From NCBI GenBank assembly GCA_000388065.2, contig KB932208.1: DNA of 64,000 nucleotides; one strand, 5' to 3'. The position numbers and the translations under genes are program-made. This document shows, piece by piece, positions 41,001 through 61,300 of this stretch. Each line of letters begins with the position of its first letter. Position 1 is the first letter of the stretch. This stretch comes from Fonticula alba ATCC 38817 (lineage: Eukaryota > Protista > Nucleariida). Under the pieces are notes generated by a model, which did no database searches, was not told the origin of the DNA, and saw nothing but the letters and a program-made list of their open reading frames with translations.

Positions 41001-43477
41001 GGCCACGCTCGTCGCCGCACGCCGGCACCATAAAACCGGGGTGATGCGCAAGAGAGCGAAAAGGGTCTGATCGGACACGGCCCCAGAAGGGCTCGACATC
41101 GCAGGCTCGTTCCAGGGGTCGTGTGGCCGAGGGGCGCGCCTGGGAGGTGTGCGGGAGGGGCAGGGCGGGCACGGCCGCTCGGCTCTCCCGGGCAGCGCAG
41201 GGTGCGTGTGCCCCGGGCCGTCGCACTCGGAACATAGGCCAGTAGTTTACTTCGGCCGGCCGGGAGGCGCAGGCGCGGGGGGGAGTGGGGGGGGTACACC
41301 GACGCGCACTCTGGCGCCGGGCGACTGCCGGCCCCGATGCCCGTCGGGGGCGCAGGGGACGGGGCGCGGGGGGGGGGGGGCGGCGCGACGCGGGCATGCC
41401 CGTCTCCCAGGCCGGCGGCCGCCTGTTTGCCGCGGTGGTTTGTTATTATCCCTCCCCCCCGGAAAGGGGAAAAATTATTAATCGTCTAATAATGAATGTG
41501 ATATATTCTCGGCTGGGGACGAAGTAGCAGCACGCCGGCTGTCCGGTATAACGACCGGGGCGAGAATGGCTCATCCTGGCGAAGGGGGGAGGCCGGGCGG
41601 TCCCCGGCACTCACACGAAGAGCGGCCCTGGCTCCACGTTTCGCCGGAGGGGGGGACCTCGAGTGTCCCGCTCTCCCGGCCTCGCCCTCGACCTTGGACC
41701 GGAGCCTTGCGCCCCGGGTCTCCTTCCGCCTCCGGGAGGAGGGCGGAGAGGGTGTCCCTTGCGTGTGCAGGGCTCTCGGTGGGGACCGAGTGAGCGGGCG
41801 CATTCTTCGCCTGGGAATGTCTCCCGCCTGTTCCTGGGCCGGTGTTTCCACCGGTGGAGGGGGGGCCCTGAGGATAGGGGGGGGGGGGGGGGGGCCGGCC
41901 TGTCATGCGAGGCGGGCCCCGCCACTCACCGCGAGGGATGCGCCTTTCGGCGCGTGTGCGGGGGGGGGGGCGGCGGGGCGTTCGTGCCTCACCTTTTTCG
42001 TGTGCCCCTAGGGAGAGCCCACCGCTGCGTGGGTCATTCTCCCCGGGGAGGGGGGGGGAGAAACGGCGCGGGCGGACAAGGGGCAATTGTTTTTATCTGT
42101 GGTCTCAATGGGAGCCAGGGCACCGTCCGCCCGGACAGGCGTCAAGGGCTGCGAGTGCGAGTCTGCGCGAGCATGCGCGCGCCGGCGGCGCCCCGTTGCC
42201 CTGTTTCACGCTTCCCTGACCGATGCTGTGCTTGCTCGTTTCCGGCGGCCGCGCGTCCCCTCGCAAGGTTGATACCCGGCGCGCGCGGACCATTCCGTCG
42301 GGCACGCGAATCGCTCGAGTCCTCCCCGGGTCCTCGCCCCTGTTGCGGGAGGCGACCTACGTTGGCGGGGCGCGGCATGCAAGGGCGGGCGCACAGGAGA
42401 GGGGTAGTCGGTAAGGGGTATATTATTGCGCGGGTGCGGAGGTCCACCCTCCCCCCCCCCCCCCCCGGGGGGGGTAGCTGAGAGGGGGCCGAGCGGCGAG
42501 AGGCCGGGGGGCGGGACGGGACAGAGGGGGGGCTTGTCGGCTTCCAGCCGCCCGGCTCCTTCTTCGCGCCCCTCTCTCCATCCCCACCTGGTACTTGGGT
42601 TGACGCATGCATGCGGTCCGCGGGGCCCTGTTGCCTGGTGTGTGTGTGTGTGTGTCTGTACATGTACTGCCCCCCCCCCCTCCCCCAAACACCCCTCATC
42701 TCTGGGCCGCGCGCGTTGCCGCAGTTCCAGGGGCATATGCGCGGGACGCAGGCGGGTGGGGGACGGGGAGCCACCAAGGAGAGAGGCGCACACGGGGGGG
42801 GGGGGGACAGGGCGCAGTCGTGTCCCTCGCCTTCTTTCCCTCGAGGCGTCCCCCCAATTTGCCTCTTCCAAGGGGCTTTCGGTGGTGCCTGGAGCGCCTG
42901 GCATGGGTGCACGCGTGTCCGTGAGGCAGGGAGGCGCCGGTGCCGGCCTCTCGGGGTCGGGATGTTCGCCAGGACCAGCCCGGCCTCGATGCCGTGTGCC
43001 CAGGGGGGTCACTGTCGAACCAGCCCCGGCCGGAGGCCTCCCGGCCCGGTGAGCCGGACCCGGACGACCTCCTCTCCCTGCCGGCCTTCAGCAATCTCGG
43101 TGCGTGCGGGCGGCCGGGCCGGGCCCTTGCTCCTGGCCCTGCCCCCCCCCCCCCCCCCCCCCGCCTGGGGAGGAGATATATGAGGACCCGACCCGGCTGC
43201 GGAGAAGGCATGGGACGGTAACCCTTTTTTAAGAGCTTTCTCCTGGTGCGTCTCCCCCTGCTGCGAGTGGGAGCGAGAGCCCTTTTTTTTGCCACCTTCT
43301 TTCTTCTCACCCCCTTGTACGCGTGTGTGTGTGTGCGCCCGACTTTCCCTCCTCCCTAACCCGTGTGCCTTCTCGCCATTTCTCTCTCTCTCTCTCTCTC
43401 CAGTTCCCCTCCCCCCTCCCCTCCCCCCCCCTCGCACCCCCCCACCCCTCCTCTCGCCTGCCGCGCTCTTCAGAATC

Positions 43478-46400
43478 ATGAAGTTCCCGCGCTGGGCCAC
43501 CCTGTGGGCGGTGCTGATGGCTATCTTTGCCATCGGCCTCCTCGCCCCGACCACTTCTGCCCAGCAGAAGTGTGGCCCCAACCACTGTTACCCGGCTGAG
43601 TGTAACGGTCACGCCACCCAGGTGGACTTTGTGTTTGTTTACGACTTCTCCGGTTCCATGAGCCCCACCTGGAACAACCTCAAGGCCGTCGTGCACCATT
43701 TCTTCGACGCGGTCTCCCGCGACAACATGGACGCCACCATCACCATTGTCGGTTATGCGTACAGCAACTCTAAGAACACCCTCCCTCGGATTGCTGTTCC
43801 CACCACCGCCATTACCCCGGGCAACCTGCAGTCCTTCAAGAACTCCTTCGACACGACCACCTTCCCTGGTGGCTATGAGCCCGGTCTGATGGCCCTGGAG
43901 CTTGCCTCCAAGGGTCACACCTACCCCGGCTTCAACATCAATTTCCGTGATGGTGCCCGTCGTGTCTTCGTCCTCTTCACCGATGAGGACTCCGATCCGA
44001 ACACCCTCTACGGTACCAACCAATATGGTGCCTTCCCCACTCATCCGTATGAGACCTTGACCTGCCTCAGCCGGAACACGGCTCCCGCTTCGGATAGCCG
44101 CTTCGTGGCTTCCAAGATGGAGATCGACCGTGTTGGTGCTCACCTGGTTCGCACCGACTCCTTCGTGCACTTCGTCGTGTCCGATCAGACCCCCAACAGC
44201 ATCTACCGTTGCTTCTCGCGCTTCCAGTTCGGCTCGTCTGCCATCAACTACGGCAACAGCAACTTTGTGGACATCTCTTCCGTGTCTGCTGCCCTGGCCA
44301 ACGATCCCCACGCCAAGGATTCGCTCCAGGCCTACATGGTCAACCGTGACATCCTGTCTCGCACCTGGAACATCGACAGCACCACCTCCTCCGGTTCTGG
44401 TACTGCCTTCGTCAACACCATTCTGCAGGCCATCCAGCAGTCTGTCGGTACTTGCCAGGACTGCACCGAATACAAGTGCTCCTCTGGTGCCAACAAGGTC
44501 TGCCTGTCGCCTGAGCACATTTGCGATTGCGCTGGTGTCCGCCACGGCCCTCACGTATGTACCTTTTTTTCCCTCTTCCCTTTCATTCTTTTTGATCCTT
44601 CTTTGTTGGGTTTTTTTTTTGCCACTTCGCCATTGGGCCGCCTGGTTTCTCTAACGACTGCATATACTTCTCTTGGACACATGGGAAATGTGCTTCAACA
44701 AAAAAACCCCATCCTCTCCTTTCCTCTCTCTCTCCCACCGATGGTAGGTTCGTGATTGCGAGAACAAGTGTGTCCTCCCCCAGAACGCCAAGGTCGTGGA
44801 TTGCGCCGGTGTCTGCGGTGGTACCGCCACTCTCAATGGCTGTGGCTTCTGCGCTCGTGATGATGCCGGTTGCCGCTCCGATTGCCGTGGTCGCACCTTC
44901 CCCAACGTCGCTCCCCCGGGCGTCGTTTCCACCGTCTGCCCGAGCTGGATCAAGCCCGAGGACATTGCCTCTCTCTACACCGAGGTCGTGATCGCGGCTC
45001 GTCTCACCTTTGCCGGCACCTCCACTCGTGATATCACCTCCTTTGTGTGTGAGTGGTTCAACAAGCACAAGCGCCACCTCACCAGCACCCAGGAGTGCAT
45101 CTTCGACGCGGCCAAGTACGCCAACGCCGCCGGTGTCAGCGTCGATTCCGCCGCCACCGAGTTCATCAAGCTCGACGGCTGGCGCCGGTTCAGCGGTGTC
45201 TGCCGCAACGCCCCGGTCAGCATCATGGCCCCGCCGCCTGATGCCTGTGGCCAGTGCCGTCAGAACCTCTACGAGCCTGCTCCCTTCTGCCAGCTGGGCT
45301 GCAATGGCCAGTATGCCACTTCCCAGGCCGCCCTCCACGAGATGGACAACTGCAACTCTTGCGTCGGTCCCGACGTGAAGGCCGCCAACCCCAACACCTG
45401 GCGCGATCTCAAGAAGGACGACTGCGGCGTTTGCAATGGCGGCAACAGCGCCAAGAACCAGTGTGGCGTGTGCTTCGAGGACAAGACTCTGGACGGCTGT
45501 GGTCAGCCCAACTGCAAGAAGCTCTTCTGCTCGATCGATTGCAACGATGTCCCCTACACCGCTGTGGACCTGATGCAGCACCACATTGACCCGTGCGGTA
45601 ACTGCGTGCGCATCCGCAACCCGGATGGCTCCGACTACATTGTCGAGGGCAAGCCCCAGCTCCGCCATCCTCGCTGCCTGGACGACTGCATCGGCACTCC
45701 CTACATGAAGGCGGAGACCTGCGATGATGCCCTCACTCCGGCCGATGTGCTTGACACCCCCTCCAAGCTGGACTCCTATTGCCACAAGGCTGCCAGCCAC
45801 TGGACCAACCCCTGCAACAAGTGTGTCCCTCTGGAGGCCACTTCGAAGGCTTGCGTTCGTGATTGCGCCCGCGCCTGGGGCGGTGACTTCTTCCTCGACA
45901 AGTGCCAGGTCTGCCGCAACCCGGCCGACAAGGAGGAGGACCATGAGGATCGCTGCCTCTTCGATTGCAAGAACACTCCCTACCTGGAGTCTGCTGGCAA
46001 GCCCCATGTCTACACCATCTGTGGCCATTGCGTGGCCAAGGACTCGCCGCTCCTGGATGAGCACATTGACTCGTGCGGCCGGTGTGTCCTCAGCCCGGGC
46101 TGGAATGCCGATGATTGCAAGAAGGACTGCTCCGGCGTCTTCCGCCTCGTGACCGACCCCAACGCCCATGTGCTGGATTCCTGCGACGAGTGCCACAACC
46201 CCAACGATCTGTCCAAGTACAACCGCCTGCTTGATGAGTGTGGTCTGTGTGTTACTCTCGAGGATCTCGATGAGAATGGCCAGACCCCCCCCTCGGCTGG
46301 TGCTATTGTTGATGACCTCGGTGTCTTCTGCGGCTGCAAGCCCAAGGCCCAGCCGGTGATGCTTTCGCTGGCTTCCGGCTCTGGCTCCAACAATGGCCAT

Positions 46401-47234
46401 GGTGGTCTGCTCATGGAGTGCGATGACCCTGAGAACCCCGGCAACAAGCTGAACCTCTGCTCGGAGGCCGGCCAGTGCCCGCCTCTCACCGCTTGCGGCA
46501 CCAACGAGAAGGGCGAGACCATCCCGGTGGACATTTGCGGTCGCTGCCCGGTCGGCACCGGCTCCAAGGACAAGGACCATCCCCTCTACGGCTACCTGGA
46601 TGATTGCGACCTTTGCTGCGACACCCACGACCCGAAGGACCTCGAGGCCAACCCCACCTGGGTGGTTTGCAACTCGTCTGTCAGCCCCTGCGGCAACTGC
46701 CACGTTCGTGAGTACCATGACCAGTGCGGCAACTGCCTGGATGTGCCCTTCGGCATTGCCCCGGGTGACACCACCACCCCCCTGCCGAATGACCCGTCCT
46801 GCGTGGCCGGCTGCGATGGCAAGTTCCCCCCTGCTGGCACCCCGCCGGAGGATCTCCCCCGCACCAACGAGTGCAATGTCTGCACTGTGGCCGACTCCGA
46901 TGAGGATAAGCTCTGTGTGACCGATTGCAACGGTGGCCACTACCATAGCGTCAACGGCAAGCCCAGCTTCATCATTGACAGCTGTGACCAGTGCGTCCGC
47001 CCGGAGGATGCCTGCTCCACTCTCGGCACCGGTGCCATCGTCGGTATCGCCATTGGTGCGGTTGCCGCTGTGGCCCTGGTGGCTGTGGCTGCCATCTTCG
47101 CCGTCAAGTACGCCCAGGCCAACGGTCTGTTCGGCCTCAACAAGCCGGCTGCCGACATGTCCTCTGGCAGCAATGCCAACCCCCTGTTCGCCGGTCAGAC
47201 CCAGACCGCCAGCAACCCTCTCTTCGTTGATTAA
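43478..47234 (+). CDS. Type I membrane receptor: signal peptide, vWA (MIDAS) domain, Cys-rich repeats, TM helix and tandem NPxF tail (integrin-beta/SibA-like). Model join(43478..44554,44748..47234)
   Basis: Signal peptide MKFPRWATLWAVLMAIFAIGLLAPTTSA. vWA motifs VDFVFVYDFSGSM, GGYEPGLMAL and FRDGARRVFVLFTDEDSD. About 18 [DN]xCxxC motifs. TM GAIVGIAIGAVAAVALVAVAAIFAVK. Tail NPLFAGQTQTASNPLFVD*. One phase-0 intron GTATGT(44555)..TAG(44747). Strong C-ending codon bias. Confidence 0.85.
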
Positions 47235-48714
47235 GTAGAGAGTGCAATGTATCTCTCCCTTCTCTCTCCTCTCCCCCCTGGTGAGAATAGGCGGGTATGA
47301 AGGCAGCAGCCAGGATCAGGGGGGCGGTCGCGACACGCACGCATGCACGCGCCGCGCGCCCACACATACTGTGTGTGTGTGCGTGGTGGTGCTGGTGATG
47401 GTGTGCCCTCTTCTCTCTCCCTCTCCTTCCTCTCCCCCTCCCTCCCTCCCTCCTTCTTTTCGCGGTGTCCTTCCCTCCCCTCGTCGCTCTCCTGGCGCGT
47501 ACGGGGGGGGGGGGCCAGGTGCTCGCGGAGAGGATGGATGGGACGGGGGGGCGCCCTGGGCGTGAGGCCGAAGGCGCGAGAGAGTCTCCCTTGTGCGCGT
47601 GTGTGTGCACAATATGCCACCTGCGTGCCAGTCCATGCGCATGTGTGTCTATCCACACGCAAATCCCCCTCCTCCCTCTCCCCTCACACGCCCCTTTGTG
47701 TGTGTGTGTGTGTGTGAGTGTGCCCCCCTTTTCCTCTGTCCTTCCCTCTTCACTCACTCAACAATGCTGTAGCCTACTATGCTGTTTGTGTTTCTTCCTG
47801 TCGCTCCTTTTGCTTTTCTTATGGGAACTTGCGCGCGGGGTGAGAGGGGGCGGAGGGCGCGGGGGGCGTGGCCGTGTGGGTGTTCCTCGTGGTTCTTTTT
47901 CTTTCCGGATGGCGTGCAATCATATGTATGCAGCCTCCTCCCTCTTTCGGCCCCTACTCGTCTCCATCTTTTTTCCCCCAGCCGGGGGGAGTGGGGGATA
48001 GCCACGCGTCCGCGATGCTCGGCCTGCGCCGGCTCCTGCCCGAGGGGGGGAACCGTGACATCGCCCTCCTTTGGCCATGATTACGTATGCCTGTGTGTTT
48101 GGAGCGAAGGCGCGGGGGACGTGCGCTGTATTGGAATGGACGGGGGAAACCTGACGCGGCTGCATGCACACGAAGCGCATGCAGCCGCCATTTGAAAGGT
48201 ATTGTGCTGCTTTGCCCCCTCCGCACCTCGCCCCTTTGGGCGCGTGGCATCTTCTCCTGATGCCGGACCTCCATAGGCACACTCCCTCTCTCTATTCCAT
48301 GCCCACTTGGGGAATGAATTGTCCCTTTCGCGTGGCTGTCCCTCCTGAACCGATCTGAGCAAGGGCGGTTGAGCGAGGAAATGGAGTGGGCATAGGGAGA
48401 GGCAGAGAGAGGGCGCAAGAAAACCCACCCCCGGAGGGAATGGCCTCCTCGACCGTGTGACGGGGTGCTGTGGAAGCTCCCCCTGGCTCCGGCTAGGCTA
48501 TCCACATCCCCCGGACATGCACATGAAGACCACGGACAATGGGAGAGTGATCTGACGGCGAGATTGCCGACAGGCTCCTCCCTGGAGATGGATGTGTACT
48601 GATGGCGCTGGAGGGCACCACGTGCCGGTGGTTTCAAGTGACGCTGCGGGGGGGGGGGGGTAGCGCAGGCAAAGGGATAGGGGATTGAGGAAGCCATGCT
48701 CGTCACTTTCTTAG

Positions 48715-49127: not shown

Positions 49128-50525
49128 TTAAGGGAAGGACATCTCGACGGCGAAGGCGAGGCCGAGCTTGACGAACTCCTTGGCGTAGTTGAGGTCGATG
49201 TTGTCGACGGTGTCGTTGACAGTGTGGATGAAGGGGCTGTGCTTGCCGAAGGGGGCCTCGAAGGTGAAGATCGAGCGGTAGCCGAAGTTGTTCCAGGAGG
49301 CGTGGTCAGAGCAGCCGTAACCGCAGAGGCTGTCCTCGTAGGTGATGAGGAGGTACTCGTCGATGAGCTTGGCCAGGAAGTCGCCGAGATCCGGGTCGGT
49401 GTAGTCGCGAATGAGGCCGATCTTGCCGTAGCCCGAGTAGCCGGTCATATCGTACTGGGACATGCCACGGACAATGGTGCCCTTCTCGTAGTAAGCCTTA
49501 GCCACACCAGCGGAACCAAGCAGACCAACCTCCTCGGCGGCGTAGAAGTGGAACTCCAGGGTCAGGTAGGGGCGGAACTGGTGGTCGACCAGGATGCGGA
49601 CGATCTCCAGGAGGGTCATGGTGCCGGAGCCATCATCATCAGCACCCGGGGCGCGGCCGGTGGCCGGGGAGGCGGTGTTGATGGAGTCGAGGTGAGAGCC
49701 GAGGATGACGATGTCCTTGTCGCGCTTGCTGGTGCCGTTGAAGCGGACAATGATGGAGGGCTGAGCGAAGCGGTGCTCGAAGGTCTCCACCTCGACATAG
49801 GGGAGGGTGCCGTTCTGGGTGGCGGCGTTGATCTCCTCCAGAAGCCACATGGTGGACTCGACACCGGAGGGGCTCTCATAGTAGCTGGGAGGGGAGGGGG
49901 GGGGAGGGGAGTCAGCTTGCAGTGGGGAAGGGGGGAACGAGCAGGCAGGCCAGGGCAGCCCCCTCGCAAGGGGGGAGAGGGAGAGAGCGCGCGCGCGAAA
50001 AAAAAAAAGGGGGACCACACGCACCGAGTGTGGAAGGAGGTGAAGGTGGTCAGCTTCTGCAGGTAGCGGTGCATGTCGATGCTCTGGTGGAGCTCGACCA
50101 CCTCGGCCTGGTACTCCAGGGAGGTGGGGATCGGCATGGCGGCCTGGGGGGTGGGGACCACGGCGCCGGTGGCGTACTCCTCGATGTCGGAGATATCACG
50201 GAAGTGGACATCACGACGGATGAGGTCGAACACCTGGGACTCGGTCATCCACTGGCGCTCGGTGTCGCTAGTGGCAATGAGGCGGGCACCGGGGGCCGGC
50301 TGTGGTGGGTGTAGGGGAGGAGAGAGGAGGGGGGGGTGAGTGACAAGGCAAATGTGCGACCAGACAGATGTGCGACCGGGTAGATGTGCGACCGGGCAGA
50401 TGACGAGGCAGGCAATCCAGGAAGAAGAGGGGGGGGGGGGGGGGACGAACAGCAGTGGTGGCCGAGGCCACGGAGGAGATGGACAGGAGTGCGGCAAGGC
50501 CGACGGAAAGCAGCTTGCCCAGCAT
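49128..50525 (-). CDS. Secreted M28-family leucine aminopeptidase (LAP1/Vibrio AP-like). Model complement(join(49128..49884,50025..50299,50451..50525))
   Basis: Signal peptide MLGKLLSVGLAALLSISSVASA and propeptide QWMTESQVFDL..HFRDIS. Zn-binding motifs GSHLDSIN, PGADDDGSG, AAEEVGLLGS, QYDMTGY, YGCSDHASW, PFIHTVND. Intron phases 0 and 2 are consistent. Confidence 0.92.
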
Positions 50526-58352: not shown

Positions 58353-61300
58353 TCAGGCCAGGCCCTGGTAATAGGCGGTCAGGGCCTTGGGCGGCTGGTA
58401 GCCCGAGCGGAGGGGCGAGGAGCGGTTGACTTGCACCGAGCATGGCTGCCCCAGGAGAGCGAGCTTTGGCAGTGGCGAATTGGATTTGTCAGTGCGCGTG
58501 TGTGTACGTGTGGCAGGGGCATTTTGAGCGCCACATGCGTCCGGCGTGCTCGTATGCGGCGCGTACCTGATCCGGAGAGCTGGTTCGGGGGACAAAGTAG
58601 GCAATGTGAGGGGAGATCTTGTGGCACGCCTCGAAGATGGCATCACTGGTGCAGGCCGCCGGCATGGGGGATGTCAGTGGGGGGGGGGAAGGGGACGCAG
58701 GAGTCAAGGCGCGCGTGATGGAAAGGGGAGAGGGGAAGGCCCCGTCAGGACGCACGCCGGAGGGGAAACCATGTTCACGCAATCAAACTGCCCGCTGCCA
58801 ATCAAATTGTCCCGGTGGGCATTGATATGCCCCCGGGAGTTCGACGACCCGGCATATACCACGCCGCCCCATGGCGGACTGAGGAAGATGATATCCGCCT
58901 TTGGGGGGGAGTGCAAAGGGATGGTGGCGGGGAGATGGGGAGGAGGCAGGTCAGAGGGGAGGCCAGCTAAAGTCGGCACAGTGGCGCCCACATGCGCACC
59001 TCAAGGGTTCCATTGTGCGCCAGCTCGAGGAAATCACCCTGGATGAAGGTGATCCGGTCATGGACACCATACACCCGGGCGTTGTTCTCGGCCATGGCCA
59101 GGCGGAAGGGATCCAGATCGATGGCGATGACTGGAATGGGTGAGTGGGGCGCAGGGGGCGCGGAGGGTGAGGCACGGAGCACGATGGTACCACAAGCCCC
59201 GAAGGGCGGGCCGAAGAGGGGAGAATCGAAGGTGGACGTACCTTGTGCGCCCAGTCGAGCAAAGGCAATGGAGTTGCCGCCAGCACCGCAGAAGGGGTCC
59301 AGCACGATCAGCCCTGGGCGCAGACACTGCTCGTCCAGCGAGAAGGACCCGAGACAGCGCTGGGCAATGTCGAGGGCGATCTTCTCCGGGGTCACCGAAA
59401 ACCAAGACTCCCGGTCCATATGGATTCCCTGGTCGAAGCGGGAAAAGAGCTGGTAGCGCTGGGCAAAGTACTTCAGCATGGCTGGCTCAAAGTGCTCGCG
59501 CTTGGCAAGGACCAGCTCGCGGTAGCGAGCCTGAAAGGCAGGCGTCCCGCGGTGGGCGAAGCAAAACTCGGCCACGGCGTCGGACGGAGAGCCGGCCCCC
59601 CGTTGACGAGTGTCGCGAGTGGATCGGCCTCTCTGGCCGCCGGTCTGGCCGTTTTGCCGGGGAGCCGAGGAGCCGCCACGCGATGGGGCATCAGATGCCG
59701 CGGACCAGCCACCGGGAGTGGAGGTGCGATTGCCAGCCTGGTGGTTGTCCGCATCATCGTCATCATCACCAGCACCATGGTTGTTGCCATACTCCTCGAC
59801 GCATCCTTCGGAGGAGTCGGCATCGGAGTCGGCATCGGAGTCGGCATCCGAATCACTGTCCTCACTCGCACTCGAGCAGTCAGACATGGAGTCGGAGCCG
59901 TCGGAGTCGTCGGCCTCTTCGGAATCGGTCAGCATGGTGTCACTGTCCTCGTCCCCGGAGGTGGCATCCGTGGCGTCGCTGCTGTCGGCGTCGATGTCAT
60001 CGCTGTCAGCCTCATCACCAGACGCGGTGTCCTCCTGATCGTCCTCGGCCTCCTCGCGCATGCGACGACTGTGCCGAATGGCACGCGCCCGGCGCCAAAC
60101 ATTGTACTCATCCAAGCCCTTGGTCTTGAGGAGATACTCATCATCCATGAAGTCTACACGGCGGCGGGAGGTCAGCGAAGGAAAACAGCAGGGGAGAGAG
60201 AAAGAGAGGGAGGGAGAGAGAGAGGGAAAAGCACAGGAAGCATGGGCCTCGTGGGTTTATGCAGTGCGCACCCTCATCGCAGCCGGCCTTTCGCGTGTCG
60301 ACGCGCTGCTCGACGATGCGCACGCCGCGCGAAAAGTATGACGAGAAGTCGCCGACACTGGAGCCGGCCACCTCAGCCTCGGTGGCATCCAACGAGGACA
60401 CCGGCAGTGAGGCCTCGGTGTCGGAGTCCGAATCGAAGACAATGTGCAGCCGGCGAACCTGGGCATGCGAGCGGAAAAGCGGCGCCACGGTCAAACTCTC
60501 CCCTTCATCCGACCGATCGTCCTCCAGCTCGTCGAGCAAATCCTCCGGGATGCTGGGGTCCTGCTCTTCATCGGGGGCAGTCCGCTCGATCAATTCGGCC
60601 GAGGCTTGCTCATAGTCGGCGATGATTGAGTGGCGACTGCCCGGGGCCGATGAGGACACGGCGCCCGGGGCCATGGTGGCCGCCAGGACGGGGCCCACAT
60701 CCGGCAAGGTCGGCAGATTCGGATATCCCGGGACCTGAACCGATGGCAGGGGGAAGGCCGGGGGCAGGGGCATCGGCAAGGGAGCAACCGCCGCTCGGCG
60801 GCGCTTGGCCGTGTGTGTCAGAGGAGGCTCCGCCCCCGACGGGGAAGAGGAGTCATCCTCAGAGTCAGAGTCATCTGAGGAATCACTGTCGGCCGTGAGG
60901 ATCGAGAAGGAGATCGAGGGCTTGACCTTGTCGGACTGATCGGAGTCGGATTCCGACATGGGGTCGGGCTCGAACTTCGGCCCGGGCGTGGGCAGGGGCG
61001 CATGCTTGGGCTCGAGATTGGCCGGTTGCTTGGCATGGCAGGCGGATGCCGGCGCCGCCAGCGAGCGAAGATGCGTCGCCTGGGCCAGCAGGAGTTCCTC
61101 CATGGCGGCAAGGCGTCTTTCCGTGGACTTTGCCAGGGACGCCTGGCCCTCGAGCAGCTGAGCCAGCTGTTCTTGCGTGCGATCGACCGATGCTTGAAGT
61201 CGGGCAAGAGCATCGGCCTCATGGGCAGCGGTATCCTGGACCTGTTGCTCTAGGCGCCGAGCCGACTCCAAGGTTAGGAAGCCCACCTTCTCGGAGCGCA

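What the first reader, a model, noticed from the sequence alone, without database searches (positions are those of the whole stretch)
43478..47234. Integrin-beta/SibA-like adhesion receptor in a fungal-side (holomycotan-like) genome
Seen: a roughly 1190-aa type I membrane protein with signal peptide, a short Cys motif (CGPNHCYPAEC), a vWA domain with intact DxSxS (VDFVFVYDFSGSM), then GGYEPGLMAL and NINFRDGARRVFVLFTDEDSD, a long Cys-rich stalk, one TM helix and a 42-aa tail with two NPLF motifs. Established: the integrin beta betaI domain reads DLYYLMDLSYSM...PEGGFDAIMQ...IGWRNVTRLLVFSTD, followed by a Cys-rich stalk, TM and two NPxY/F motifs. Dictyostelium SibA (similar to integrin beta) shares the vWA + TM + double-NPxY design and binds talin. 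Integrins are generally considered lost in fungi. Inference: this is an integrin-beta-like substrate or cell-cell adhesion or phagocytosis receptor in a lineage sister to fungi. If the organism is the aggregative amoeba Fonticula, it is a direct candidate for aggregation or collective-migration adhesion.
Basis: partly seen in the sequence, partly recalled or inferred. Interest (0 to 1): 0.92.

Follow-up and report, generated by a model that had tools for sequence, protein, structure and literature searches.

The report
Integrin-beta-like adhesion receptor in Fonticula
A real, spliced and transcribed gene of the fungus-related amoeba Fonticula alba encodes a single-pass surface receptor whose head and tail most resemble animal integrin beta chains; it belongs to an undescribed receptor family in a lineage reported to lack integrin-like adhesion molecules.

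Summary
Two exons (43478-44554 and 44748-47234), joined by a 193-nt GT..AG intron seen in RNA contigs, encode a 1187-aa type I membrane protein. It has a signal peptide, a CGPNHCYPAEC motif, a vWA-type head with DxSxS, an 80-Cys stalk, a GxxxGxxxG TM helix and a 42-aa tail with two NPLF motifs 12 residues apart.

The genome is Fonticula alba. A paralogue, H696_03181, shares the design and the exact intron position. First readers of this scan had already flagged that paralogue on another scaffold.

The head is a vWA fold. All 50 best Foldseek matches among solved structures, and 24 of the 30 best in Swiss-Prot, are integrin beta chains; no Sib protein appears. The TM+tail profile finds integrin beta7, beta2, beta1 and beta3 tails as its best PDB matches.

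It is neither an integrin beta nor a SibA-E family member. Pfam Integrin_beta and vWA_SIBA-E do not match. PSI, hybrid and I-EGF domains, ADMIDAS and the HDRxE clasp are absent. The head belongs to a wider 'TDEDSD' vWA subfamily with bacterial members.

It defines a family with at least 12 environmental relatives and a Thecamonas relative. Adhesion and talin coupling are inferred, not shown. I class it as a new variant of a known kind.

The parts
43478..44554 (+). Exon 1 (aa 1-359): signal peptide, Cys motif, vWA-type head, first Cys of the stalk
   Evidence: ORF and sequence. An RNA contig covers 43460-44554 and continues at 44748.
43478..43561 (+). Signal peptide, aa 1-28 (MKFPRWATLWAVLMAIFAIGLLAPTTSA)
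   Evidence: N-terminal hydrophobic peak (KD 1.99). The relatives align here with their own signal peptides. The cleavage site is inferred.
43571..43603 (+). CGPNHCYPAEC motif (aa 32-42), the family signature CGPxxCY
   Evidence: C32, G33, C37 and Y38 are invariant and C42 nearly so in 12 family members.
43613..44452 (+). Head domain (aa 46-325): vWA fold plus family-specific insertions
43643..43657 (+). MIDAS-type D56-F-S58-G-S60 (followed by M61, as in integrin beta DLSYSM)
   Evidence: D56, S58 and S60 are invariant in the family and align to the DxSxS of integrin alpha2-I.
43868..43888 (+). GGYEPGL (aa 131-137): invariant E134 at the MIDAS Thr/Glu position
   Evidence: E134 is invariant. 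It aligns to Thr of alpha2-I and to the Glu of PEGGFDAM in integrin beta8.
43979..43996 (+). T168-D-E-D-S-D173 after strand beta4, followed by a roughly 35-aa loop with conserved C196
   Evidence: T168, E170, D171, D173 and C196 are invariant. The stretch aligns to LLLVMTD...NDGNCH of integrin beta8. The loop has low pLDDT.
44555..44747 (+). Intron, 193 nt, GT..AG, phase 0
   Evidence: The joint 44554->44748 is seen in RNA contigs of X5 and X7. The paralogue H696_03181 has an intron at the same position and phase (VRHxxx|VxDC).
44748..47234 (+). Exon 2 (aa 360-1187 plus stop): stalk, TM helix, tail
   Evidence: ORF, RNA contigs, 28-34% identity to P0001, P0002 and P0012 over its whole length.
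44453..47015 (+). Cys-rich stalk (aa 326-1115, interrupted by the intron): repeated DCxG...DxCGxC modules plus a helical insert at about aa 410-520
   Evidence: 80 Cys and 11 DxC[GDN]xC motifs. No Pfam, PDB-sequence, Atlas or PDB-fold relative. The model has low confidence, pLDDT 57.
47025..47105 (+). Transmembrane helix, aa 1119-1145, with G1121xxxG1125xxxG1129
   Evidence: Hydropathy peak 2.77. The glycines at G1121 and G1125 are invariant in 14 family members.
47106..47231 (+). Cytoplasmic tail, 42 aa (KYAQANGL...), juxtamembrane [RK]YAxKNGL motif
   Evidence: Family alignment A5. In the PDB its profile hits integrin beta7 at E 0.0016 and the beta2 tail at E 0.0038.
47178..47189 (+). Membrane-proximal NPLF (aa 1170-1173)
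   Evidence: N, P and L are invariant in the family. It aligns to the NPLF/NPLY of integrin beta2, beta7, beta1 and beta3.
47214..47225 (+). Distal NPLF (aa 1182-1185), 12 residues after the first and preceded by T-x-T-A-S
   Evidence: Invariant N and P. It aligns to the NPKF/NPRF/NPKY of integrin beta2, beta7 and beta1 at the same spacing.

Best explanation
The gene encodes a cell-surface receptor of Fonticula alba built on the integrin-beta/Sib plan. It belongs to a separate, so far undescribed family.

Shown:
- It is a spliced transcript encoding a type I membrane protein with a metal-site (MIDAS-type) vWA head.
- The nearest solved structural relatives of the head are integrin beta I domains.
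- The stalk is long, disulfide-rich and of a type unrelated to integrin I-EGF repeats.
- The TM helix is glycine-rich.
- The tail motifs (NPLF-x8-NPLF with a Thr/Ser cluster between them) align best with integrin beta tails.
- All of these features are conserved in a clade of relatives.

Inferred:
- The head binds ligands on substrate, prey or neighbouring cells through a divalent cation held by D56/S58/S60, E134 and the TDEDSD acidic cluster.
- The stalk holds the head away from the membrane.
- The NPLF motifs recruit a PTB/FERM-F3 adaptor (talin or a talin-like protein) that links the receptor to actin, as shown for Dictyostelium SibA and for integrins.
- It probably acts without an integrin-alpha-type partner, because the membrane-proximal clasp motif is missing.
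For: - Gene and splice.
- Architecture.
- Pfam VWA.
- Family with the same architecture (12 or more representatives carrying CGPxxCY, DxSGS, E-P-G-L, T[DN]EDSD, Cys-rich stalk, GxxxG TM and 2x NPL[YF]). It forms a clade with 95/89 support.
- Paralogue H696_03181 in F. alba has a near-identical TM and juxtamembrane region and the same intron position.
- HMMER aligns E134, NINFR, VFVLFTD and the post-beta4 Cys loop to the equivalent integrin beta8 elements.
- Tail: profile A5 gives integrin beta7 at E 0.0016, the beta2 tail at E 0.0038, and beta1 and beta3 next. No other NPxY protein is hit in the tail part.
- Function of such tails: SibA binds talin through its proximal NPxY, and talin is under force only if SibA is present (PMC9197732, PMC12686525).
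Against: - No experiment or co-expression data bear on function.
- I could not check whether F. alba has a talin with an F3 subdomain. First-reader notes in this genome mention only truncated F0-F1 talin-like heads (unverified).
- The tail lacks the Trp upstream of the first NPxY and the membrane-proximal helix that talin also contacts in integrins.
- D169, the expected fifth MIDAS residue, is N or A in several relatives, so metal coordination may differ.
- ADMIDAS and SyMBS residues are absent.
- By a geometric score the head is as close to Rpn10, ITIH or a pilus adhesin vWA as to integrin beta. By sequence, integrin alpha I domains score slightly better than beta8.
- NPxF/Y motifs are also endocytic sorting signals.
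Confidence: 0.6

Rival explanations
1. It is a highly diverged true integrin beta orthologue that pairs with an integrin-alpha-like (FG-GAP) subunit of F. alba.
For: The head's best solved structural matches and the tail's best sequence matches are integrin beta. One relative (P0009) scores 23.2 bits on Pfam Integrin_beta, just under the 24.8 cut-off. First-reader notes report FG-GAP receptors with a KRGFFR-like tail elsewhere in this genome (unverified).
Against: There is no Pfam Integrin_beta, PSI_integrin, I-EGF, Integrin_B_tail or Integrin_b_cyt match for the window protein. The vWA starts about 15 residues after the signal peptide, so there is no hybrid domain for it to be inserted into. 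It has no ADMIDAS DD and no HDR(R/K)E clasp motif. The head clusters with a vWA subfamily that includes bacterial proteins.
Confidence: 0.1
2. It is an orthologue of the Dictyostelium Sib proteins: one ancient Sib family spanning Amoebozoa and Obazoa.
For: It shows the three features used to define Sib proteins: an extracellular vWA, a glycine-rich TM helix, and a conserved tail with two NPxY-type motifs (PMC3279395). A second, low-Cys class of environmental relatives shares the head and tail, and one of them (P0027) gives a faint vWA_SIBA-E match, E 0.029.
Against: Pfam vWA_SIBA-E (PF24909) gives no match to the window protein even at E 10, nor to 9 close relatives at E 0.1. No Sib protein is among the 30 best Swiss-Prot fold matches, while integrin beta chains fill the list. 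That SibA-E are in Swiss-Prot is from my own knowledge. No Dictyostelium protein was among the 150 best of 860 hits of the exhaustive profile search. I could not obtain a Sib sequence for a direct comparison.
Confidence: 0.12
3. It is mainly an endocytic or phagocytic cargo receptor. The NPLF motifs would serve as sorting signals for clathrin adaptors with PTB domains rather than as a force-bearing link to actin.
For: NPxY/F motifs are classical internalisation signals, as in the LDL receptor family (established knowledge). F. alba feeds on bacteria. The vWA head could bind prey surfaces.
Against: The tail profile does not hit LDLR, APP or other endocytic NPxY tails in the PDB; it hits only integrin beta tails. 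The double motif with 12-residue spacing and an intervening Thr/Ser cluster is the integrin talin/kindlin arrangement. The two roles are not exclusive, since SibA serves both adhesion and phagocytosis (PMC9197732).
Confidence: 0.15
4. The resemblance to integrin beta is convergent. A bacterial-type 'TDEDSD' vWA domain would have been joined in an early eukaryote to an unrelated stalk and to a tail that evolved NPxY motifs independently.
For: The head's motif set (DxSxSM, E[AP]GLEAIR, TDEDSD, E..Q..SxQ..R) is shared with many low-Cys proteins that lack such a tail, some with PEP-CTERM anchors or MopE motifs. Relatives combine the same head with three different stalk types: Cys-rich, mucin-like and EGF-like. 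VIA Z does not single out integrin beta.
Against: Head and tail both point to integrin beta, by independent methods. The beta-type Glu at the MIDAS, the IGWR-like turn and the long post-beta4 loop with a Cys all align to beta8. The bacterial relatives could equally be relatives of the integrin beta I domain itself.
Confidence: 0.3

Closest known systems
Integrin beta chains (animals, filastereans, apusomonads)
   Same: - Type I topology.
- Metal-site vWA head with DxSxSM and a Glu at the position where alpha I domains have Thr.
- An IGWR-like turn, and a long loop with a Cys after strand beta4.
- A Cys-rich stalk in the broad sense, and a Gly-containing TM helix.
- A tail with NPLF-x8-NPxF at the same spacing and with intervening Thr residues; 10 of 21 residues are identical to the beta2 tail.
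- They are the best structural matches of the head and the best sequence matches of the tail.
   Different: - No PSI domain, no hybrid domain (the vWA is not an insertion), no I-EGF repeats and no beta-tail domain.
- No ADMIDAS or SyMBS residues, and no HDR(R/K)E membrane-proximal motif.
- Pfam Integrin_beta and Integrin_b_cyt are not matched.
- TDEDSD replaces TD(A/Q)xxH.
- The stalk is built from DCxG...DxCGxC modules with no known relative.
Dictyostelium SibA-SibE (similar to integrin beta)
   Same: A single-chain receptor with an extracellular vWA, a glycine-rich TM helix and a conserved tail with two NPxY-type motifs. It belongs to a free-living, bacterivorous, aggregative amoeba that lacks canonical integrins (PMC3279395, PMC9197732).
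   Different: - The head is not recognised by Pfam vWA_SIBA-E.
- No Sib is among the best Swiss-Prot fold matches.
- The protein is about 1190 aa, against more than 1850 aa for SibA (PMC3279395 gives Tyr-1850 just before its TM helix).
- The stalk is Cys-rich.
- Talin binding has been tested for Sib proteins but not here.
Fonticula alba H696_03181 (XP_009495340.1, 'hypothetical protein', 1569 aa)
   Same: A paralogue in the same genome with the same architecture and motifs. The head is 28% identical and the stalk 34%. The last stalk module, TM helix and juxtamembrane region are nearly identical. Its tail carries two NPLF motifs, and it has an intron at the same position and phase.
   Different: It has a longer stalk (about 380 more residues) and five exons instead of two. 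In the tree it is not the window protein's nearest relative, so the duplication is old or the window copy has evolved fast.
Thecamonas trahens AMSG_02252 (XP_013760802.1, 661 aa, uncharacterised)
   Same: Homologous head over 273 columns (hhalign E 1.7e-39), with DTSGS, GGWEP and TDEDSD, a single TM helix and an NPLY in the tail.
   Different: It has no CGPxxCY motif, a shorter stalk with EGF-like Cys patterns, and only one NPLY.
Amoebal lectin-type adhesins with integrin-like tails (Entamoeba Gal/GalNAc lectin, Acanthamoeba mannose-binding protein)
   Same: Cys-rich type I adhesins of amoebae. [quoted passage not shown]
   Different: To my knowledge they have no vWA head. They were not compared here, so this is a lead from the literature only.

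Membership tests
Integrin beta chain | Beta I (vWA) domain recognised by Pfam Integrin_beta (PF00362) | tested here: not met
   No match for exon 1 even at E 10. Only one relative (P0009) comes close, at 23.2 bits against a cut-off of 24.8. Structurally, integrin beta is the best-ranked PDB match, but VIA Z does not separate it from other vWA domains.
Integrin beta chain | PSI domain, and a hybrid domain into which the beta I domain is inserted | tested here: not met
   No Pfam PSI_integrin match. Only about 17 residues (a 3-Cys motif) lie between the signal peptide and strand beta1. The model shows no beta-sandwich flanking the vWA.
Integrin beta chain | Three metal sites: MIDAS plus ADMIDAS (DD after DxSxS) and SyMBS | tested here: not met
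   MIDAS-type D56/S58/S60 and E134 are present and invariant. The residues after S60 are M-S-P-T-W-N-N, with no acidic pair. There is no D-x-P before E134.
Integrin beta chain | Four I-EGF repeats and a beta-tail domain in the stalk | tested here: not met
   No Pfam EGF or Integrin_B_tail match. The stalk profile finds no EGF protein in the PDB. Foldseek finds nothing at E below 0.1, but the model is poor (pLDDT 57), so the fold itself is unresolved.
Integrin beta chain | Cytoplasmic tail with two NPxY/F motifs about 12 residues apart | tested here: met
   NPLF at aa 1170 and 1182. The family profile hits integrin beta7 (E 0.0016), beta2 (E 0.0038), beta1 and beta3 tails as the top PDB matches, with both motifs aligned. 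Pfam Integrin_b_cyt stays below its threshold.
Integrin beta chain | Membrane-proximal HDR(R/K)E motif and heterodimer with an alpha chain | tested here: not met
   The juxtamembrane sequence is KYAQANGLFG; the family consensus is [RK]YAxKNGL. Pairing with an alpha chain cannot be tested with these tools.
Dictyostelium Sib (SibA-E) | vWA domain of SibA-E type (Pfam PF24909) | tested here: not met
   No match for the window protein at E up to 10, nor for 9 close relatives at E up to 0.1. No Sib is among the 30 best Swiss-Prot fold matches.
Dictyostelium Sib (SibA-E) | Glycine-rich transmembrane domain | tested here: met
   G1121xxxG1125xxxG1129. The first two glycines are invariant in 14 family members.
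Dictyostelium Sib (SibA-E) | Conserved cytosolic domain with two NPxY motifs | tested here: met
   Two NPLF motifs, conserved as NPL[YF] across the family.
Dictyostelium Sib (SibA-E) | Tail binds talin; loss reduces adhesion | not testable with these tools
   This needs a pull-down or genetics. The presence of a full talin in F. alba was not established here.
von Willebrand factor A (vWA) superfamily | Rossmann-like alpha/beta fold with a DxSxS metal site | tested here: met

The most novel reading that the evidence does not exclude
This family would be a surviving single-chain 'proto-integrin beta': a lineage homologous to integrin beta in both its head and its tail, already present in the common ancestor of Obazoa (Fonticula and Thecamonas carry it) and possibly related to Sib. 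If so, the beta-tail/talin adhesion link was never lost on the fungal side of opisthokonts. The family would then supply the missing link between SibA and animal integrins, and it would give Fonticula's collective invasion and aggregation a concrete receptor.
Probability: 0.2. Interest if true: 0.85.

Novelty: new variant of a known kind. Interest (0 to 1): 0.68.

Why it matters
Fonticula alba is the aggregative, collectively invading amoeba on the fungal side of opisthokonts. Its cell-cell and cell-substrate links are unknown.

- The paper that described its collectives states that the genome lacks obvious cadherins, integrins or Dictyostelium-like adhesion molecules (PMC9097593).
- A survey of the integrin adhesome reported no Sib proteins outside Dictyostelia and treated Holomycota as devoid of integrins (10.1101/2020.04.29.069435).
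- How SibA relates to integrins is stated as an open question (PMC12686525).

This gene and its paralogue show that F. alba has transcribed receptors with an integrin-beta-like head and tail. They also show that such receptors form a family reaching Thecamonas and many uncultured eukaryotes. That provides a named candidate for adhesion experiments in Fonticula and a new data point for the origin of the receptor-talin link.

Tried and rejected
- **Word-indexed protein searches.** Searches with exon 2, the paralogue P0012 and P0009 returned only a handful of unnamed environmental proteins. The length filter excludes Sib-sized proteins for the window's pieces.
- **No direct Sib or integrin comparison.** I could not obtain a Dictyostelium Sib or an integrin beta sequence as a usable reference. 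No direct BLAST/HHalign comparison or joint phylogeny with them was possible.
- **Self-hit missing.** The window protein itself was never returned by any protein database search, although its paralogue is there. I tried to check its public annotation through the neighbouring peptidase gene, but that gene's exon structure was not clear, so I dropped this.
- **ESM Atlas.** Feature search of the head gave only sub-threshold leads (0.83-0.87, generic vWA and some integrin beta clusters). The stalk gave nothing. Atlas shape search gave generic vWA.
- **Stalk structure.** The AF2 model is poor (pLDDT 57, pTM 0.26) and its Foldseek search has no hit below E 0.1, so the stalk fold is undetermined.
- **AFDB clusters.** The best matches (A0A1Y3NNK8, A0A1Y1ZXK3, A0A4P9WXN3; TM by query 0.55-0.62) are unnamed VWFA proteins whose organisms the tool does not give, so I draw no taxonomic conclusion from them.
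- **Talin in F. alba.** Literature and scan-note searches gave nothing usable.
- **Neighbouring genes.** They give no functional context; the only one identified nearby is an M28 peptidase.
- **Chance resemblance.** I rejected the idea that the tail motifs are chance: 81 in 2,000,000 random tails, plus family conservation.


Full report
**1. What is in the sequence**

An ATG at 43478 opens an ORF that runs to a GT at 44555. The frame resumes after an AG at 44747 and runs to a stop at 47232-47234.

Laying contigs of two RNA libraries from the source organism on the region shows the exact joint 44554->44748. It skips 193 nt with GT..AG ends, in both libraries. One contig runs from 43460 across the joint to 46253 without a single difference. 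The contigs have assembler depths in the thousands, which shows that the gene is transcribed but is a poor measure of level.

The product is 1187 aa. Its elements are:

- a signal peptide (aa 1-28);
- CGPNHCYPAEC (aa 32-42);
- VDFVFVYDFSGSM (aa 49-61);
- GGYEPGLMAL (aa 131-140);
- NINFRDGARRVFVLFTDEDSD (aa 153-173);
- 80 cysteines between aa 326 and 1110;
- one TM helix (aa 1119-1145, GxxxGxxxG);
- a 42-aa tail with NPLF at aa 1170 and 1182.

Two NPx[YF] motifs arise in 81 of 2,000,000 random tails of this composition.

**2. Organism and paralogue**

An exhaustive profile search with the head found Fonticula alba H696_03181 (XP_009495340.1, 1569 aa, 'hypothetical protein') among the best hits.

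- It is 28% identical to the window protein in the head and 34% in the stalk.
- It is nearly identical through the last stalk module, the TM helix and the juxtamembrane segment, and its tail also carries two NPLF motifs.
- Its gene spans 6128 bp on KB932204.1 of GCA_000388065.2. That is exactly the length of a first-reader note on 'another piece of the same genome' describing an integrin-beta/Sib-like receptor with a cysteine-repeat stalk.

So the window is F. alba.

Both genes have a phase-0 intron at the same place, between head and stalk: VRHGPH|VRDC against VRHSGK|VFDC. In a tree of head domains the two are not each other's nearest relatives, and the window copy sits on a long branch. The duplication is therefore old, or this copy evolves fast.

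**3. The family**

The 12-13 best representatives in the 1.84-billion-protein library share the whole plan:

- CGPxxCY;
- D[VF]SGS;
- an invariant Glu in GGxEPGL;
- T[DN]EDSD;
- a CxCxGV entry into an approximately 8%-Cys stalk;
- GxxxG in the TM helix;
- [RK]YAxKNGL just inside the membrane;
- NPL[YF]-x8-NPL[YF] at the C-terminus.

All of these relatives come from environmental assemblies with no name.

A Thecamonas trahens protein (AMSG_02252) has a clearly homologous head (hhalign E 1.7e-39). Its stalk is different and EGF-like, and it has a single NPLY.

A second class of environmental proteins joins the same head and a two-NPLY tail through a mucin-like Ser/Thr stalk.

The head's motif set also occurs in many low-Cys proteins without such tails. 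Some carry PEP-CTERM anchors or MopE motifs, which marks them as bacterial.

In the tree, the Cys-rich two-NPxY receptors form one supported group (95/89). The mucin-stalk receptors form another, and the bacterial-like proteins a third.

**4. How integrin-like is the head?**

By sequence:

- Pfam reports only the generic VWA family (E 4.4e-7). There is no Integrin_beta and no vWA_SIBA-E match, even at E 10. The same holds for nearly all relatives. One relative reaches 23.2 bits on Integrin_beta, and one mucin-class protein gives a faint SIBA-E match.
- A family profile searched against all PDB sequences finds collagen VI, then integrin alpha2 and alpha1 I domains (E about 3e-7), then integrin beta8 (E 2e-6).
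- The alpha I matches cover only the first half of the domain. The beta8 match runs on through the second half.
- In that match, HMMER aligns the invariant E134 with the Glu of PEGGFDAM, which is the beta-type MIDAS residue; alpha I domains have Thr there, as the alpha2 alignment shows. It also aligns NINFR with IGWR, VFVLFTD with LLLVMTD, and the long post-beta4 loop and its conserved Cys with NDGNCH.
- ADMIDAS and SyMBS residues are not present.

By structure:

- An AF2 model of exon 1 (pLDDT 73, pTM 0.75) is a vWA fold with a disordered loop after beta4 and an insertion between beta5 and beta6.
- With Foldseek, all 50 best of 350,542 PDB chains are integrin beta subunits (E 6e-8 to 1e-6).
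- 24 of the 30 best Swiss-Prot models are integrin beta chains, led by beta4 at E 1e-8. No Sib protein is listed.
- TM-scores are modest (0.40-0.44).
- Shape-only search in the ESM Atlas gives generic vWA.
- AFDB clusters contain closer but unnamed VWFA proteins (TM by query 0.55-0.62).

My reading is that this is a vWA subfamily of its own. Among characterised proteins its nearest relative is the integrin beta I domain, but by a small margin.

**5. Stalk**

The stalk is built of DCxG...DxCGxC modules with a helical insert. It has no Pfam match, no PDB sequence relative and no Atlas neighbour. A low-confidence model finds no fold match. It is not an I-EGF stalk by any test I could run, and its fold remains open.

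**6. TM helix and tail**

These are the most conserved parts of the family. A 75-position profile of them, searched against 177,635 PDB sequences, gives these top matches:

| PDB match | E-value |
|---|---|
| integrin beta7, TM helix plus tail | 0.0016 |
| integrin beta2 tail peptide | 0.0038 |
| integrin beta7 tail | 0.02 |
| integrin beta1 | 0.024 |
| integrin beta3 | 0.066 |

Both NPxY/F motifs are aligned at the same spacing. Other hits touch only the TM helix. The window tail shares 10 of 21 positions with the beta2 tail around the motifs, including NPLF, two Thr residues and NPxF.

The membrane-proximal HDR(R/K)E clasp of integrins is replaced by [RK]YAxKNGL. This argues against an integrin-type alpha/beta clasp.

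**7. Mechanism**

Shown: a transcribed type I receptor with a conserved metal-site vWA head and a conserved integrin-beta-type tail.

Inferred from established knowledge:

- vWA MIDAS sites bind acidic ligand residues through a divalent cation.
- NPxY/F tails are bound by talin F3 and kindlin or other PTB domains.
- In Dictyostelium, the proximal NPxY of SibA binds talin A, and talin bears force only when SibA is present (PMC9197732, PMC12686525).

I therefore take this to be a substrate, particle or cell adhesion receptor coupled to actin through a FERM/PTB adaptor. My confidence is about 0.6.

An endocytic role for the motifs is the main functional rival. Whether the likeness to integrin beta reflects common descent or convergence is unresolved.

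**8. Comparison with the literature**

I found no paper describing these proteins.

- Toret et al. state that F. alba lacks obvious integrins or Dictyostelium-like adhesion molecules (PMC9097593).
- The relation of SibA to integrins is called open.

The finding is therefore a new variant of a known kind of receptor, in a lineage where none was recognised.

First readers of this scan had already noted the paralogue, its tail and its vWA on another scaffold, as well as the tail of this gene.

Noticed in passing
window 43478-47234, against the protein databases: The window's own 1187-aa protein was never returned by the word-indexed or exhaustive protein searches, although its paralogue H696_03181 is in them. 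It may be missing from, or modelled differently in, the public annotation, or it may be hidden by the tools.
   Followed up: partly
L007:3001-9128 (F. alba KB932204.1) and window 44555-44747: The paralogue has five exons. Its third intron lies at exactly the same codon boundary (phase 0, between VRHxxx and VxDC) as the window gene's only intron.
   Followed up: yes
P0023, P0027, P0028, P0037, P0040, P0044, P0051, P0088, P0094, P0123, P0127 (JGI metagenomes): A second class of receptors has the same vWA-type head, a mucin-like Ser/Thr stalk or pAdhesive_15 plus several vWA domains, a Gly-rich TM helix, and two NPLY motifs 11-15 residues apart. The head-plus-tail combination is therefore reused with different stalks.
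   Followed up: partly
P0100, P0139, P0039 and about 30 other representatives: Bacterial-looking proteins (PEP-CTERM anchor, MopE motif) carry the same vWA subfamily signature: DxSxSM, E[AP]GLEAIR, TDEDSD and downstream E/Q/S-Q/R. These could be bacterial relatives of this head, and perhaps of integrin beta I domains.
   Followed up: partly
L003:1-13076 (Logan SRR28397937): The contig carrying relative P0011 is gene-dense with very short spacers. Its called genes match guanylate cyclase, alpha-amylase and GT5 glycogen/starch synthase families. It is an unidentified compact eukaryotic genome.
   Followed up: no
window 49128-50024 (-): The next identifiable gene downstream is an M28-family peptidase (Pfam E 4e-34). 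Its exon structure was not resolved.
   Followed up: partly
window 58967-60148 (-): An ORF with an RNA cap guanine-N2 methyltransferase domain (Methyltransf_15, E 9e-15), likely a Tgs1-type enzyme.
   Followed up: no
window about 42400-42700 and 47300-47700: Both flanks of the gene contain CA/GT-type dinucleotide runs, read as HTHTHT or VCVCVC in ORF translations, together with poly-C/poly-G tracts.
   Followed up: no
exon 2 aa 54-160 (protein aa about 410-520): A Cys-poor, predicted helical insert interrupts the Cys-rich stalk. It is conserved in P0001, P0002 and the paralogue, and it is modelled at low confidence.
   Followed up: no
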